Made by a program: the position numbers and the translations under genes. Below the pieces are notes generated by a model. That model was not told the DNA's origin and did no database searches. It was given only the letters and a program-made list of their open reading frames with translations. Shown here piece by piece: positions 1,579 to 58,323 of a DNA stretch of 64,000 nt. The stretch is taken from the IMG/VR virus record IMGVR_UViG_3300044712_001255, positions 186,001 to 250,000 of that record. One strand, written 5' to 3'. The first letter of the stretch is position 1; each line of letters begins with the position of its first letter.

Positions 1579-3159
1579 ATGCTTGATGATTCAAAGTCAG
1601 ATAAGTCAACGCACGTCTTGTTTGGAGACGATGCAAAGAAAGCACTTTTAGCAGGCGCAGAGATTGTCGCCGAGGCTGTGGGTTGCACGATGGGTCCCCG
1701 CGGCAAGACAGTGTTGATTCAGCAACAGGGAAAGGCACCCGTCCTAACGAAGGACGGCGTCACCGTTGCACGATCCCTGCGTCTCAAAGATCCGGTGAAG
1801 CGCATGGGTGGCGACTTGCTTCGAGACGCAGCAACGCGCACCAATGAAGTCGCTGGTGATGGCACCACAACCGCCACAGTAATTTCGTATGCATTGATGC
1901 GCGAAAGTTACAAGCTGATCGCCGCTGGCGTTGATCCCATTGTGTTAGCAGATGACATCAAGAACGCATCAGAAGTTGCCCTGCGAACGTTGAAGGACGT
2001 TTCTCGCAAGGTTGAGACACGTGAAGACATTGAACACGTTGCGACAATCTCTGCGAATGGTGACTCTGAGATTGGCGCCATTATCGTTGATGCCCTAACG
2101 AAGGTGGGACGCGACGGCATAGTCACCGTCGAGGACGCTAAGGGCACACGCACGTCAATGGAACTCGTTGAGGGCCTGCAATTCGACAGAGGGTATCTTT
2201 CGCCATACTTTGTTACCAACAATGATCGTATGGTTGCGCAGTACTCAGATTGCCAAGTTCTTGTGACAGACAAGAAGCTGTCAACATTGAACGACCTCGT
2301 GCCCGTGTTGGAATACGTTCATCGGCAAGGGCAGTCGTTGCTCATCATAGCGGATGACATTGATGGTGATGCCTTACACGGGTTGGTGCTCAATAGAGTG
2401 AAGTCAAATCTGCGAGTCGTAGCTGTAAAGGCGCCAGGTATCGGTCCAGTGAAGGCACATATCCTAGAGGACATTGCGACTCTTGTGGGTGCACAGTTAA
2501 TCTCCGCCAAGAAGGGTACTGAGATGAAAGACGCTCCCACACTCTTGGGCACTGTGAAGAGGCTTACGGTGAGTGCAAAGGCAACCACACTTGTGGGCAC
2601 AGGAAAAACTCGAGAGGCTGTGGATGCCCGGATTGTTGACCTGCGAGCTCAGTTGGCAGACCCAACGCTCGATCCTGATGAGCGCAACTTGCTTGGTACT
2701 CGACTTGCCAGGCTCGCAGGTGGCGTCGCGGTAATCAAGGTCGGTGGAGCAACAGAACTTGAGATGGTTGAACGTCGCTATCGTATTGAAGATGCCCTGA
2801 ATGCTACGAGGGCAGCGATCGAAGAGGGATACGTTGCCGGTGGCGGAATCACGTTGATGCGAATTGCAGAGACGCTTGCCGTAGACGTGCCGTCGCTGTC
2901 TGCTGCTTGTATGGAACCACTGCGACGAATCTGTAACAATGGCGGTGTGAACTTTGACGTTGTTCGTCACAGGTGGAATGCGTTGAAGGACGCTTCACTT
3001 GGAATGGGATACAATGCAGCCACAGATGAAGTCGTGGACATGTACATGGCAGGCATCATCGACCCAGTGAAAGTGTCTAGAACAGCACTTGAAAATGCAG
3101 TGTCTGTTGCAATCGCATTTTTGACACTCGACGCAGCGATCTACGAAGACGAGGAATAA
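1579..3159 (+). CDS. groEL: group I chaperonin GroEL (phage-type, no GGM tail)
   Basis: TMGPRGKTV, TKDGVTVA, AGDGTTTAT, GLQFDRGYLSPYF, RLARLAGGVAVIKVG, IIDPVKV. Confidence 0.95.
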   Translation: MLDDSKSDKSTHVLFGDDAKKALLAGAEIVAEAVGCTMGPRGKTVLIQQQGKAPVLTKDGVTVARSLRLKDPVKRMGGDLLRDAATRTNEVAGDGTTTATVISYALMRESYKLIAAGVDPIVLADDIKNASEVALRTLKDVSRKVETREDIEHVATISANGDSEIGAIIVDALTKVGRDGIVTVEDAKGTRTSMELVEGLQFDRGYLSPYFVTNNDRMVAQYSDCQVLVTDKKLSTLNDLVPVLEYVHRQGQSLLIIADDIDGDALHGLVLNRVKSNLRVVAVKAPGIGPVKAHILEDIATLVGAQLISAKKGTEMKDAPTLLGTVKRLTVSAKATTLVGTGKTREAVDARIVDLRAQLADPTLDPDERNLLGTRLARLAGGVAVIKVGGATELEMVERRYRIEDALNATRAAIEEGYVAGGGITLMRIAETLAVDVPSLSAACMEPLRRICNNGGVNFDVVRHRWNALKDASLGMGYNAATDEVVDMYMAGIIDPVKVSRTALENAVSVAIAFLTLDAAIYEDEE

Positions 3160-8659: not shown

Positions 8660-8884
8660 ATGGCAAGAGAAGAGAGAGACGATCGGATTGAGTTTGAAGG
8701 CATTGTTGACGAGGTTATGCCTGGAACGATGTTTCGAGTCAAAGTCTCAGACAATCACATGGTGCTTTGTACGTTGAGCGGAAAGATGCGCCAGCACAAG
8801 ATTCGCGTTTTGCTTGGTGACAGAGTTCGTATCGAAGTTAGCCCGTATGACCTTACGCGTGGGCGTTTGTCCCGGCGTCTATGA
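8660..8884 (+). CDS. infA: translation initiation factor IF-1
   Basis: [18 protein letters not shown]...[34 protein letters not shown]; SD-like AGGAAA upstream. Confidence 0.92.
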
Positions 8885-27410: not shown

Positions 27411-27484
27411 TGCACCCCCTCGGGTTCGAACCGAGACTAGCCGGTTTATGAGACCGGGGCTCTGACCGATTGAGCTAGAGGTGC
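27411..27484 (-). tRNA. tRNA with anticodon CAT (elongator Met or Ile2); CCA not encoded
   Basis: Acceptor GCACCTC/GGGGTGC+A; D-arm TAGCTCAATCGGTCAGAGC; anticodon arm CCGGT-CTCATAA-ACCGG; T-arm CTCGG-TTCGAAC-CCGAG; G1-C72 argues against initiator. Confidence 0.92.
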
Positions 27485-30510: not shown

Positions 30511-30848
30511 GAGGTACAGTGGGAATCGAACCCACGAACGCTGTAGCCCTTGCAAACTACCGTCAATGGCGTCCACCACCAGGCACCAAATAATTCGAAA
30601 CCAGTATCGAAGTTGGTCTACCCTTGGTTGTACAAAATAGCGACGAGTGACCCGCAGATTCTAACATGCAGAAACATCCGAAAACAAGCTGGATCGAAGT
30701 CGCTCGTCAGCAGGTTGGAAAGGTCATGAGCCTTTTGGGCGCCCCATTTGCGCACCCAACCCAAAAACGTTACTGACACCTAGTGCACAGCGTTGTTCAC
30801 GTTTGATTTACAAATGTCCACAAGCCTGTCGACCTGACACCTGGACCC
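30511..30848 (-). ncRNA. candidate tRNA-ended structured RNA (about 338 nt), or a 76-nt pseudo-tRNA at 30511-30587
   Basis: Perfect T-arm GTGGG-TTCGATT-CCCAC then TGTACCT, which pairs 6/7 with GGGTCCA at 30848 or 5/7 with GGTGCCT at 30587; internal hairpins. Confidence 0.4.
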
Positions 30849-55505: not shown

Positions 55506-55670
55506 ATGGAAAACCTGATCACCGAGAGCGGACGCTCTGATCTCTCACTCATCAACCGCGTCCGCACCTTGCTGGGATACGGGCTGAATGATGCCGAGAT
55601 TGCGGGCATCCTCAACGTCTCTCGCGGCGATGCGTTCCTCATCATCACTGCCACCAAGATTCTCGAGTGA
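55506..55670 (+). CDS. small HTH-like protein (leaderless)
   Basis: GYGLNDAEIAGILNVSRGDA. Confidence 0.6.
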   Translation: MENLITESGRSDLSLINRVRTLLGYGLNDAEIAGILNVSRGDAFLIITATKILE

Positions 55671-56936: not shown

Positions 56937-57179
56937 ATGGCAAGGAACCTCAATCACCAGGTCGCAAACGTAGTCCTCTCCCTCCCATGCTGCGTCATGT
57001 CCACCATGGTGGCGTTCGTGGCAATCTTCATCACAGTGGCGGGGGTCACGGGACTCGCCTTCAGCATCCTCCTCGGTGTGGACTGGAACATGGGGTGTGC
57101 CCTTGGCATGGTTGCCTGGTTCGGCGTCTACGTCATCGTGGGCCTCATCATTGAGGTGGTGAAGGCCCGCTCTCACTGA
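56937..57179 (+). CDS. membrane protein, 2 TM (leaderless)
   Basis: TATAAC-aagacc-ATG. Confidence 0.7.
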   Translation: MARNLNHQVANVVLSLPCCVMSTMVAFVAIFITVAGVTGLAFSILLGVDWNMGCALGMVAWFGVYVIVGLIIEVVKARSH

Positions 57180-57193
57180 GGTATAACAAGACC

Positions 57194-57367
57194 ATGCACG
57201 GCAAACACTACTACCACTTCACTGTCGAAGGCACCTACATGGGCAAGAAGACGACGCTCTTCATCAACGCCACGTCTCCTCTCCACGCCATGAAAGCATG
57301 GTGCCGCAAGATGAAAGCAAACATCGAACTCGTCGCGTTCAGCTACGTCAACGTGGACGGCGAGTGA
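57194..57367 (+). CDS. hypothetical protein (leaderless)
   Basis: TATAAC-aagacc-ATG; 57 aa. Confidence 0.65.
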   Translation: MHGKHYYHFTVEGTYMGKKTTLFINATSPLHAMKAWCRKMKANIELVAFSYVNVDGE

Positions 57368-57420
57368 CAGAGACTCTTCCTTAGCTTATACTGATCTCAG
57401 GTAACGGAAACAAAAACAAC

Positions 57421-57523
57421 GGCCTGCGGGTGTTGGTGGAATCTCTGCTGCAGAGGAGATGAAACCACGGAAGCATATGGCGTCTATGACGACAAGGTTT
57501 AGGTTCAAATCCTGAGCGGGTCA
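57421..57523 (+). ncRNA. tRNA-like RNA (103 nt): acceptor and T-arm intact, interior non-tRNA
   Basis: GGCCTGC/GCGGGTC-A; TTAGG-TTCAAAT-CCTGA; own promoter GTGACA-17-TATACT. Confidence 0.6.
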
Positions 57524-57578
57524 CTGTGAAGATATGATCTTCCAAGGTTATACTCTTCTTAGATACGGAAACAAACAT

Positions 57579-57717
57579 AGTCTGTTGGTGTGGATGTTCT
57601 CCGACGCTGGAGCTTGCTCCAGCATAGGGAATACACGGTCAACACACAGCGTTGAAGGCGCAAGCGCTTTCATTGAAGGCGCTGAGTCGCTAGGTTCAAA
57701 CCCTGCACAGACTACCA
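57579..57717 (+). ncRNA. tRNA-like RNA (139 nt) with encoded CCA and two long internal hairpins
   Basis: AGTCTGT/ACAGACT-A-CCA perfect acceptor; AGG-TTCAAAC-CCT T-arm; hairpins GCTGGAG-CTTG-CTCCAGC and GAAGGCGC-AA-GCGCTTTC; own promoter GTGAAG-17-TATACT. Confidence 0.7.
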
Positions 57718-57793
57718 TGCCCTGGAACGCCTCTGGAGGTGGACGGGAAGTGATATCACCCGAACGAATGAAGTTCGAATCTTCACTGGGGCA
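57718..57793 (+). tRNA. degenerate tRNA (possible GAT anticodon, pseudo-tRNA-Ile)
   Basis: TGCCCTG/CTGGGCA with one mismatch; perfect T-arm TGAAG-TTCGAAT-CTTCA; imperfect anticodon stem around GT-GAT-AT. Confidence 0.45.
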
Positions 57794-57832
57794 CTGAGTG
57801 ACAACAGACCTCCACTGAGGTACAACTGGACC

Positions 57833-58075
57833 ATGGCAAACACCTCCTACCGAGTCGAGCTCTTCAAGATCAATCCCAACGCCCAGGAGAATGACGTCTG
57901 CGGCAACGTGACCACCTCCACGTTCTCCACCCTCGAGGCTGCTCATGACTGGTTCGAGTTCTTCAAGGCTCAGTGTGTCCACGCTGACGACACTGTGGAG
58001 CTCCTCCGGGCCGAGCACGCCTCGGACGGCAGTGACGACTTGGTTGACCTCCAGGCGATTTCCTACTACCCCTGA
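57833..58075 (+). CDS. hypothetical protein (leaderless)
   Basis: TACAAC-tggacc-ATG. Confidence 0.7.
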   Translation: MANTSYRVELFKINPNAQENDVCGNVTTSTFSTLEAAHDWFEFFKAQCVHADDTVELLRAEHASDGSDDLVDLQAISYYP

Positions 58076-58113
58076 TCGGTGATCCCAACAACTCACAAGG
58101 GTATAACAAGACC

Positions 58114-58323
58114 ATGGAAAACATCTACGCGGTAACTCATATTGATTACGAGGGTACCTACTCCGTCAAGGTCTACCGCTCCGTGGTTGACGCCTTTACC
58201 AGCTTCGCTGCCATCAAACTCTACGGCAATTGATCTTTCAAGCAGCTGGTCGGTCCCTGCACCTTCGGCGAGGATGTTACTTCCTCCACCAACGTCATCC
58301 GTCAGGAGTTCAACGAGGGGTGA
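58114..58323 (+). pseudogene. leaderless gene interrupted by an in-frame TGA at 58231
   Basis: Frame continues 29 biased codons (SFKQLVGPCTFGED...) to the next TGA. Confidence 0.5.

What the first reader, a model, noticed from the sequence alone, without database searches (positions are those of the whole stretch)
57399..57793. Cluster of tRNA-ended RNAs with the D/anticodon domains replaced by long hairpins
Seen: three consecutive elements. The 103-nt (57421-57523) and 139-nt (57579-57717, encoded CCA) elements each have a 7-bp acceptor stem and a canonical TTCRA T-loop but no recognisable anticodon arm. Each has its own promoter tile and a shared A-rich leader (ACGGAAACAAA). A 76-nt degenerate tRNA follows directly. 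Established: the acceptor/T-arm top half is what RNase P, 3' processing enzymes, CCA-adding enzyme and EF-Tu recognise, and tRNA-like domains occur in tmRNA and bacterial Yrl RNAs. Inference: a possibly undescribed class of phage tRNA-mimic RNAs, acting as decoys for tRNA-targeting defences or as stably processed scaffolds.
Basis: partly seen in the sequence, partly recalled or inferred. Interest (0 to 1): 0.82.

Follow-up and report, generated by a model that had tools for sequence, protein, structure and literature searches.

The report
tRNA-ended small RNA genes in phage
An uncultured 324-kb phage carries three back-to-back genes for tRNA-derived small RNAs, two of them with long hairpins where the decoding part should be; phage T4's "species 1" RNA, whose role has never been found, has the same build, so this is a new example of an old puzzle rather than a new kind of molecule.

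Summary
At 57421-57523 (E1, 103 nt), 57579-57717 (E2, 139 nt, encoded CCA) and 57719-57793 (E3, 75 nt) there are three tandem elements. Each has a perfect 7-bp acceptor stem and a TTCRA T-loop. No dinucleotide shuffle of the window (0 of 200) puts even two such hits within 400 nt. ARAGORN at default settings and Rfam find nothing there.

E1 and E2 each sit behind a GTGAnn-17-TATACT promoter that aligns in register with about 23 leaderless gene promoters nearby. Both share the leader ACGGAAACAAA. They look like paralogues, with three compensatory changes in the acceptor stem.

Their D arm is replaced by a 45-49-nt hairpin. A 17-nt hairpin remains at the anticodon-arm position but has C33, not U33. 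E3 is a degenerate tRNA-Ile(GAU)-like gene.

The claim of an undescribed class is only partly right. T4 rnaC (species 1 RNA, 139 nt) has the same plan, is conserved in 748 phage records with covariation, is absent from Rfam, and has no known function. A covariance model of rnaC does not detect E1 or E2, so they are analogues, not detectable homologues.

I found no orthologues anywhere, so the inner hairpins have no covariation support and the function remains inferred.

The parts
57364..57392 (+). E1 promoter: -35-like GTGACA (57364-57369), 17-nt spacer, -10 TATACT (57387-57392). Predicted start is A57399.
   Evidence: scores it 10 of 12 against the sigma-70 consensus. A 19-nt block is identical to the promoter of the leaderless gene at 55506. 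It aligns in register with 23 gene tiles.
57399..57420 (+). E1 5' leader, 22 nt, containing ACGGAAACAAA (57404-57414). Predicted to be removed by RNase P.
   Evidence: The sequence is. The start site is inferred from the fixed 6-nt spacing between the -10 box and the A of ATG in the gene tiles. Cleavage is inferred.
57421..57523 (+). E1, a 103-nt tRNA-ended RNA. Parts: acceptor 57421-57427 paired with 57516-57522; long arm I about 57430-57474 at the D-arm position; 17-nt arm II 57478-57494 (loop UCUAUGA, closable to a UAU triloop); T arm 57499-57515; discriminator A57523. No CCA is encoded.
   Evidence: The MFE fold gives acceptor pair probabilities of 0.65-0.93 and T-stem probabilities of 0.85-0.93. 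It was found by the top-half scan. ARAGORN at the 80% threshold calls the 3' 80 nt a tRNA-Ile(UAU).
57526..57554 (+). E2 promoter: GTGAAG (57526-57531), 17-nt spacer, TATACT (57549-57554). Predicted start is A57561. It begins 3 nt after E1, with no terminator in between.
   Evidence: Register alignment. No terminator-like site lies in 57100-58300.
57561..57578 (+). E2 5' leader, 18 nt, containing ACGGAAACAAA (57565-57575).
57579..57717 (+). E2, a 139-nt tRNA-ended RNA. Parts: acceptor 57579-57585 paired with 57707-57713; arm I 57589-57637 (49 nt, apical G(CUUG)C tetraloop); arm II 57639-57655 (5 bp plus 7-nt loop ACACAGC); arm III 57657-57688 (32 nt, at the variable-arm position); T arm 57690-57706 (C.C at pair 49-65); A57714; encoded CCA 57715-57717.
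   Evidence: MFE is -54 kcal/mol with z = -3.3, and 0 of 200 shuffles fold as well. Acceptor pair probabilities are 0.80-0.99. Found by the scan.
57719..57793 (+). E3, a 75-nt degenerate tRNA-Ile(GAU)-like gene. It has a 7-bp acceptor, a 4-bp D stem with a GG-containing 6-nt loop, and a T arm with a UUCGAAU loop. The anticodon loop GUGAUAU has U33 and A37, but pairs 30-40 and 31-39 are mismatched, which gives an 11-nt open loop. It has A8 instead of U8.
   Evidence: ARAGORN finds it only at the 80% threshold or in mitochondrial mode. Rfam's tRNA model gives no hit at E<=10.

Best explanation
E1 and E2 are phage genes for stable, non-decoding small RNAs that evolved from tRNA genes, probably by duplication of one ancestor.

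Proposed pathway:
1. Each is transcribed from its own sigma-70-like promoter, of the same class that drives the surrounding block of tiny leaderless genes. This is probably the early, host-takeover block.
2. There are no terminators, so transcripts run on into the next unit.
3. The acceptor/T-arm top half serves as a handle for the host tRNA-maturation machinery. RNase P would cut before G57421, A57579 and G57719. Exonucleases would trim E2 back to its encoded CCA. The CCA enzyme would finish E1 and E3.
4. The result would be discrete, exonuclease-resistant RNAs of about 103, 139 and 75 nt.
5. The enlarged arms at the D position (E1, E2) and the variable-arm position (E2) are the functional payload. 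They most likely bind or sequester a host or phage protein.
6. E1 and E2 cannot decode, because they have no U33 anticodon loop and no D-loop to form the elbow.
7. E3 is a divergent tRNA-Ile(GAU)-like RNA. It may still decode, or it may be a variant that resists nucleases.

Shown: the sequence anatomy, the promoter class, non-randomness, paralogy with compensatory acceptor changes, and an architectural match to T4 species 1 RNA. Inferred: transcription, the processing sites, stability and the payload function.
For: - The three top halves in tandem are non-random: 0 of 200 shuffles give 2 or more in 400 nt.
- The locus is intergenic. The only overlapping ORFs have no family match and no gene tile. 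A Logan assembly of the same phage calls no gene in the gap; the JGI call of this contig has only one 56-aa minus-strand ORF there.
- The promoters align in register with 23 gene promoters: GTGA at -35, TATAAC or TATACT at -10, and a fixed 6-nt spacer to +1. A 19-nt block is identical to another promoter.
- E1 and E2 are alignable paralogues. Three of their 7 acceptor pairs are changed on both sides and remain paired.
- The leader and the GGUGU that follows the acceptor strand are kept exactly, while the bodies have diverged.
- E2 folds far better than shuffles (z = -3.3) and carries a G(CUUG)C tetraloop.
- CCA is encoded, and a 1-nt spacer leads to E3, as in phage tRNA operons (PMC11143913 on T4 dimeric precursors).
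- RNase P is documented to process non-tRNA phage RNAs with tRNA-like ends (PMC11143913).
- T4 rnaC has the same plan, and 19 of its 46 pairs show compensatory change. This shows that the design is a maintained, functional one in phages.
Against: - No orthologue was found, so nothing shows conservation or covariation of the inner hairpins.
- The fold z-scores of E1 and E3 are unremarkable (-1.6 and -1.3).
- In the context of the full predicted transcripts, the acceptor helices are not the favoured fold (probabilities 0.07-0.39).
- The T stem of E2 has a mismatch and low predicted probability.
- There are no expression data.
- The host is unknown.
- Nothing in the window encodes a tRNA-directed enzyme or an obvious partner.
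Confidence: 0.55

Rival explanations
1. The elements are relics: a small tRNA array decaying into pseudogenes, with insertions in the D and variable regions and no present function.
For: ARAGORN at default settings and Rfam reject all three. The anticodon arms are degenerate: C33 in E1 and E2, and two mismatched pairs in E3. The E2 T stem has a C.C mismatch. No orthologues exist to show purifying selection.
Against: All 21 acceptor pairs are intact, with three compensatory double changes between E1 and E2. All three T loops are canonical. E1 and E2 each keep a full promoter in exact register with active gene promoters, plus an identical 11-nt leader. The inserted segments form stable helices with a G(CUUG)C tetraloop, and E2 has z = -3.3. 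The locus sits in a very tightly packed gene block where dead DNA would be unusual.
Confidence: 0.15
2. They are working decoder tRNAs of unusual shape. For example, tRNA-Ile variants remodelled to escape host anticodon nucleases, as described for phage tRNAs with altered anticodon loops.
For: Relaxed ARAGORN reads GAU (Ile) in E3, with U33 and A37, and UAU (Ile) in E1. All three have A73 and C4-G69, which I recall as IleRS-relevant positions in E. coli. Phage tRNAs that evade tRNA-targeting defences are documented (PMC10264068, PMC11555353).
Against: The candidate anticodon loops of E1 and E2 have C33. In E1 the loop can close by U32-A38 and C33-G37 pairs into a triloop. The D loop, needed for the elbow and for ribosome and EF-Tu geometry, is replaced by a 45-49-nt helix. 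E2's loop ACACAGC gives an anticodon not used by bacteria. There is no sign of stop-codon recoding that would call for special tRNAs. This reading is plausible only for E3.
Confidence: 0.12
3. They are tRNA-processed antisense or regulatory RNAs, like the C4 RNA of P1 and P7. The tRNA-like ends only direct RNase P maturation, and a loop pairs with a target mRNA.
For: RNase P maturation of the phage C4 antisense RNA is a precedent (PMC11143913). E1 and E2 have their own strong promoters in a regulatory-looking early block.
Against: No complementarity longer than 11-13 nt to anything else in the window, which is chance level. No loop-loop or extended single-stranded seed is apparent. Host targets cannot be tested because the host is unknown.
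Confidence: 0.1
4. The region is protein-coding (the 87-aa ORF 57534-57797), or it is a structured 5' UTR of the next gene.
For: ORFs of 87 aa (+) and 182 aa (-) overlap the locus. JGI called a 56-aa minus-strand ORF inside it.
Against: None has a family match. None has the gene tile that precedes every real gene here. The ATG at 57534 lies upstream of the E2 promoter. The next gene (57833) has its own complete promoter tile, starting right after E3. The Logan gene call of the same locus has no gene there.
Confidence: 0.03

Closest known systems
Bacteriophage T4 species 1 RNA (rnaC / RNA C), 139 nt, and its relatives in Tevenvirinae
   Same: - The 5' and 3' ends pair in an acceptor-like stem, next to a 5-bp T stem with a UUCGAAU loop.
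- The D and anticodon region is replaced by one long hairpin plus a second hairpin.
- The size is the same as E2 (139 nt).
- It lies head-to-tail with tRNA genes, with spacers of a few nucleotides, and is made from the tRNA precursor transcript (PMC2330249).
- It is missed by Rfam.
- Its function is unknown (PMC3014915, PMC9697503).
   Different: - There is no detectable homology. The rnaC covariance model hits only the T arms of E1-E3, at 2-5 bits.
- The rnaC acceptor has two conserved U.U mismatches and no encoded CCA. E1 and E2 have perfect 7-bp stems.
- rnaC has no promoter of its own and has been classed as a late RNA (PMC9697503). E1 and E2 each have a promoter of the class shared with the leaderless gene block, plus a shared leader.
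- rnaC carries invariant UUGACG and CGUCAA motifs that are absent here.
Canonical and class II tRNAs (Rfam RF00005)
   Same: 7-bp acceptor, T arm, discriminator A73, CCA (E2), and arm order compatible with a cloverleaf. E3 also has a D arm with GG, and a GAU loop with U33 and A37.
   Different: The D arm is replaced by a 45-49-nt helix. E1 and E2 have no U33 anticodon loop. E2's arm III (32 nt) is longer than the variable arms I recall for class II tRNAs. Rfam gives no hit at E<=10, and ARAGORN finds something only at the 80% threshold.
Bacterial and phage Y-RNA-like YrlA with Ro/Rsr
   Same: A non-coding RNA that contains a tRNA-like module. Some jumbo phages carry the Ro/TROVE protein together with a tRNA-like partner (PMC7824862).
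   Different: In YrlA the RNA ends lie in the Ro-binding stem, not in the acceptor stem (my own knowledge). No TROVE gene is in the window. No Rfam hit.
tmRNA tRNA-like domain
   Same: Acceptor plus T arm without an anticodon arm; an RNase P substrate.
   Different: No mRNA-like reading frame and no pseudoknots. No G3:U70 pair. The size is far too small. The ARAGORN tmRNA search is negative.
C4 antisense RNA of phages P1 and P7
   Same: A phage small RNA matured by RNase P through a tRNA-like end (PMC11143913).
   Different: C4 is an antisense regulator with a known target. No target complementarity was found for E1 or E2.

Membership tests
tRNA (RF00005) | Scores above threshold with tRNA covariance or heuristic models | tested here: not met
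   Rfam gathering threshold and E<=10 give no hit at 57300-57900. ARAGORN at default settings finds none. At the 80% threshold it finds only E3 and the 3' 80 nt of E1.
tRNA (RF00005) | 7-bp acceptor stem, 5-bp T stem and 7-nt T loop with UUCRA | tested here: met
   The E2 T stem has 4 of 5 pairs.
tRNA (RF00005) | Anticodon arm of 5 bp with a 7-nt loop carrying U33 and a purine at 37 | tested here: not met
   E1's loop is UCUAUGA and E2's is ACACAGC (C33 in both). E3 has U33 and A37, but pairs 30-40 and 31-39 are mismatched.
tRNA (RF00005) | D arm with a GG-containing loop able to meet the T loop | tested here: not met
   In E1 and E2 this position holds a 45-49-nt helix. The feature is met only in E3.
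T4 species 1 RNA (rnaC) family | Sequence and structure homology to the family profile | tested here: not met
   Model R1 was built from 5 divergent members. It gives only T-arm-local hits of 2.4-4.7 bits (E 0.8-3.3) over E1-E3.
T4 species 1 RNA (rnaC) family | Architecture: paired ends, long hairpin, second hairpin, then T arm | tested here: met
   Folds of E1 and E2 compared with the rnaC fold and its covariation-supported consensus.
T4 species 1 RNA (rnaC) family | Embedded in, and co-transcribed with, a tRNA gene cluster | tested here: inconclusive
   E2 abuts the tRNA-like E3 with a 1-nt spacer. However, there is no canonical tRNA within 30 kb, and E1 and E2 have their own promoters.
T4 species 1 RNA (rnaC) family | Invariant UUGACG and CGUCAA hairpin motifs | tested here: not met
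   These are invariant in alignment A4. They are absent from the corresponding loops of E1 and E2.
YrlA / Y RNA-like | Encoded with a Ro60/Rsr (TROVE) gene | tested here: not met
   No TROVE family among 113 ORFs of the window. The remaining 260 kb of the contig was not examined.
YrlA / Y RNA-like | Ends of the RNA form the Ro-binding helix, and the tRNA-like module is internal | tested here: not met
   The ends form the acceptor stem. No Rfam match at E<=10.
tmRNA | tRNA-like domain with G3:U70, plus a tag reading frame and pseudoknots | tested here: not met
   ARAGORN tmRNA mode is negative, including relaxed settings. Pair 3-70 is CG, UA and CG in E1, E2 and E3.
RNase P substrates with tRNA-like ends | Cleaved by RNase P at the base of the acceptor stem | not testable with these tools
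   This needs an in vitro cleavage assay or 5'-end mapping.

The most novel reading that the evidence does not exclude
E1 and E2, together with T4 RNA C, may represent a recurrent and possibly convergent phage strategy: a tRNA top half used as a natural 'tRNA scaffold' to mass-produce stable structured RNAs early in infection. These RNAs would act as decoys or inhibitors of host enzymes or immune nucleases that recognise the acceptor/T-arm end of tRNA. If so, this would give the 50-year-old orphan RNA C its first functional context.
Probability: 0.15. Interest if true: 0.8.

Novelty: new variant of a known kind. Interest (0 to 1): 0.5.

Why it matters
Phage tRNAs are now recognised as counter-defence tools. 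In contrast, the tRNA-shaped but non-decoding RNAs of phages, such as T4 RNA C, have had no known function for half a century and are missing from Rfam and from most annotations.

This locus is a second, unrelated example. It has its own strong promoters and two diverged paralogues. That argues that the design (a tRNA processing handle plus hairpin payload) is selected repeatedly. It also gives a compact 470-bp fragment that can be expressed and assayed. Finally, it shows that standard tRNA and Rfam scans miss such genes.

Tried and rejected
**Searches for orthologues, all negative or self only**
- blastn of the locus and of E2 and E3 against GenBank phages.
- IMG/VR pattern scans for promoter plus leader, for leader plus GGTGT, and for the gene tile. 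These returned only the source contig IMGVR_UViG_3300044712_001255 and chance hits. The one other contig with the tile shares no proteins with the window.
- A metagenome scan for leader plus T loop gave 65 hits. All were ordinary tRNAs or coding sequence.
- Two scans of genome contigs.
- The neighbouring proteins (80 aa and 137 aa) are orphans among 5.8 billion proteins. The 358-aa neighbour was found only in the source contig.
- Other assemblies of the same phage are identical across the RNAs, so they give no variation.

**Explanations rejected**
- Stop-codon recoding with suppressor tRNAs: no recoding signal, and no CUA, UCA or UUA anticodon in a proper loop.
- Introns: ARAGORN's intron mode gives only forced, inconsistent calls.
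- Mobile hairpin insertions: the hairpins are not repeated elsewhere in the window.
- Antisense targets within the window: matches of at most 13 nt.
- Loop-loop kissing in E1-E3: none found.
- SRP, 6S, RNase P and other known RNA families: no Rfam hit.
- T4 rnaD shows no T arm, so it is not a useful comparator.

Full report
**Where the window comes from.** The window is part of IMGVR_UViG_3300044712_001255, a 324,468-bp uncultured phage contig. Window position 1 corresponds to about contig position 186,004. The same locus occurs in four independent assemblies. The one whose DNA could be read is identical across the RNA cluster. The sequence is therefore real, but it offers no natural variation. 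The window also encodes a GroEL-like chaperonin, IF-1, UvdE, a trypsin-like protease and AAA ATPases. It encodes no Ro/TROVE protein, RtcB, RNA ligase or CCA enzyme.

**Checking the observation.** ARAGORN and Rfam find only one tRNA in the window, tRNA-Met(CAT) at 27411-27484(-). They find nothing at 57399-57793, even at E<=10.

I wrote a scan for a perfect 7-bp acceptor stem next to a T arm with a TTCRANN loop. Shuffled windows give 1.4 hits on average and never two within 400 nt (0 of 200).

- The acceptor stems are fully paired in all three elements.
- The T loops are UUCAAAU, UUCAAAC and UUCGAAU.
- The discriminator is A in each.
- E2 alone encodes CCA, followed by one U and then G1 of E3.

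**Promoters and leader.** About 23 genes between 35.7 and 58.2 kb begin with a tile (GGTATAACAAGACCATG and variants) in which a -10 box lies 6 nt before the A of the start codon. These are leaderless units. When the upstream regions are aligned on that A, a GTGA-type -35 element appears at a fixed distance in nearly all of them.

E1 and E2 fit the same register: GTGACA-17-TATACT-6-A57399 and GTGAAG-17-TATACT-6-A57561. Nineteen bases of the E1 promoter are identical to the promoter of the gene at 55506. Both leaders contain ACGGAAACAAA.

No terminator-like site lies in 57100-58300. The E2 promoter starts 3 nt after E1, and the next gene's promoter starts right after E3. Transcripts must therefore be separated by processing.

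**Anatomy.**
- **E1** folds as a four-way junction: acceptor, a roughly 45-nt imperfect hairpin at the D-arm position, a 17-nt hairpin, a 4-nt linker, and the T arm.
- **E2** folds as a five-way junction: acceptor, a 49-nt hairpin capped by a G(CUUG)C tetraloop, a 5-bp/7-nt-loop hairpin, a 32-nt hairpin at the variable-arm position, and the T arm. Its energy is z = -3.3 against shuffles.
- **The 17-nt hairpins** sit where an anticodon arm would be. However, their loops (UCUAUGA, ACACAGC) have C33, and E1's can close to a triloop. They are not decoding loops.
- **E3** is close to a normal cloverleaf, with a D stem, a GG-containing D loop and the loop GUGAUAU carrying U33 and A37. Two mismatched pairs open its anticodon stem, and it has A8. 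ARAGORN accepts it as tRNA-Ile(GAU) only at the 80% threshold. At that threshold it also reads the 3' 80 nt of E1 as tRNA-Ile(UAU).

**Paralogy.** E1 and E2 align through the promoter, the leader, the acceptor strand, the GGUGU that follows it, and the T arm. Three of the seven acceptor pairs differ on both sides yet stay paired. This is the only covariation evidence available. It supports selection on the acceptor helix, not on the inner arms.

**What it is not.**
- The overlapping ORFs have no family matches and no gene tile.
- There is no evidence of stop-codon recoding.
- The hairpins are not repeated elements.
- There is no complementarity to other window sequences beyond chance.
- The tmRNA search is negative.
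- There is no Ro gene and no match to any Rfam family.

**Closest known thing.** T4's tRNA region encodes two stable RNAs of unknown function, rnaC (species 1, 139 nt) and rnaD (PMC3014915; PMC9697503). They are co-transcribed with the eight tRNAs (PMC2330249).

Folding rnaC gives paired ends (5 bp plus two U.U), a 65-nt hairpin closed by a 3-bp stem, an A-rich linker, a 10-bp hairpin, and a CCGGG-UUCGAAU-CCCGG T arm. This is the same plan as E1 and E2. rnaC is present in 748 phage records, mostly unannotated.

An alignment of five divergent members from four genera gives a consensus in which 19 of 46 pairs show compensatory change. These include the acceptor and T stems. In Klebsiella phage KaAlpha the element sits between tRNA-Trp and tRNA-Gly.

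Rfam has no model for rnaC. A covariance model built from this alignment detects only the T arms of E1-E3, at 2-5 bits. E1 and E2 are therefore architectural analogues, not demonstrable homologues, of rnaC.

**How it probably works.** RNase P, 3' exonucleases, the CCA enzyme and the T-loop modification enzymes recognise the acceptor/T-arm half of tRNA. RNase P is known to mature other phage RNAs with such ends (PMC11143913).

The most economical reading is that the top half is a processing and stability handle, and the long arms are the payload. The RNAs would be produced in quantity from promoters of the same class as the surrounding small-gene block. What the payload does is not shown. Candidate roles include:
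- sequestering a host tRNA-directed enzyme or immune nuclease (the tRNA-targeting defences in PMC10264068, PMC11555353, PMC12851939 and PMC12445682 make this plausible);
- binding a phage protein;
- regulating by base pairing.

I put 0.55 on 'processed, stable, non-decoding tRNA-derived RNAs'. I put much less on any specific target.

**Limits.** No orthologue was found in GenBank phages, IMG/VR, JGI metagenomes, GTDB genomes or, through neighbouring proteins, the 5.8-billion-protein collection. The collections could be searched only with exact patterns, so diverged relatives may have been missed. There are no expression data and the host is unknown.

**Verdict.** This is a new variant of a known but unexplained kind.

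Noticed in passing
window 35707-58116 (+): About 23 genes start with a near-identical 17-nt tile, GGTATAACAAGACCATG: a -10 box 6 nt before the start codon, so the mRNAs are leaderless. A GTGA-type -35 element lies at a fixed distance. Most of these genes encode orphan proteins of 40-140 aa, and the block has no terminators.
   Followed up: partly
window 30511-30633 (-): A possible fourth tRNA-ended element in an intergenic gap. It has a T arm GUGGG-UUCGAUU-CCCAC followed by UGUAC, which pairs with GUACA about 110 nt upstream (only 5 bp), and two hairpins in between. It gives weak Rfam hits to tRNA-Sec (15.3 bits) and mascRNA (14.2 bits). Its fold z-score is unremarkable.
   Followed up: partly
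window 8660-8881 (+): The phage encodes a 74-aa translation initiation factor IF-1 homologue (Pfam eIF-1a, E 1.6e-20). This is notable beside the many leaderless genes. The window also encodes a GroEL-like chaperonin at 1579-3159 and a UvdE endonuclease.
   Followed up: no
L008:1409-1547(-) (T4 rnaC) and alignment A4: In T4 species 1 RNA and four divergent relatives, the two hairpins carry invariant hexamers that are exact complements: UUGACG near the tip of hairpin 1 and CGUCAA in the loop of hairpin 2. This suggests a conserved loop-loop contact. The family is absent from Rfam and unannotated in most of 748 phage records.
   Followed up: partly
L165:653-762 (-) (metagenome contig Ga0209542_10088025): A 110-nt tRNA gene with an insertion of roughly 35 nt, followed by a T-run. 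ARAGORN misses it, but Rfam's tRNA model finds it at 39.8 bits. This shows that Rfam can tolerate inserts, which makes its silence on E1-E3 more telling.
   Followed up: partly
L006:8235-8251 and L007:7181-7197 (IMGVR_UViG_3300027754_000067); L178 (Halioglobus MAG): The exact gene tile also occurs in an unrelated 86-kb viral contig behind consensus TTGACA -35 boxes. It occurs once in a Halioglobus MAG behind GTGAAG at the phage-like spacing. No protein similarity to the window was found in L006/L007; L178 was not compared.
   Followed up: partly
window 27411-27484 (-): The only canonical tRNA in the window is tRNA-Met(CAT) at 63 bits, without encoded CCA. I did not test whether it is an elongator or initiator tRNA-Met or a lysidine-type tRNA-Ile2.
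   Followed up: no
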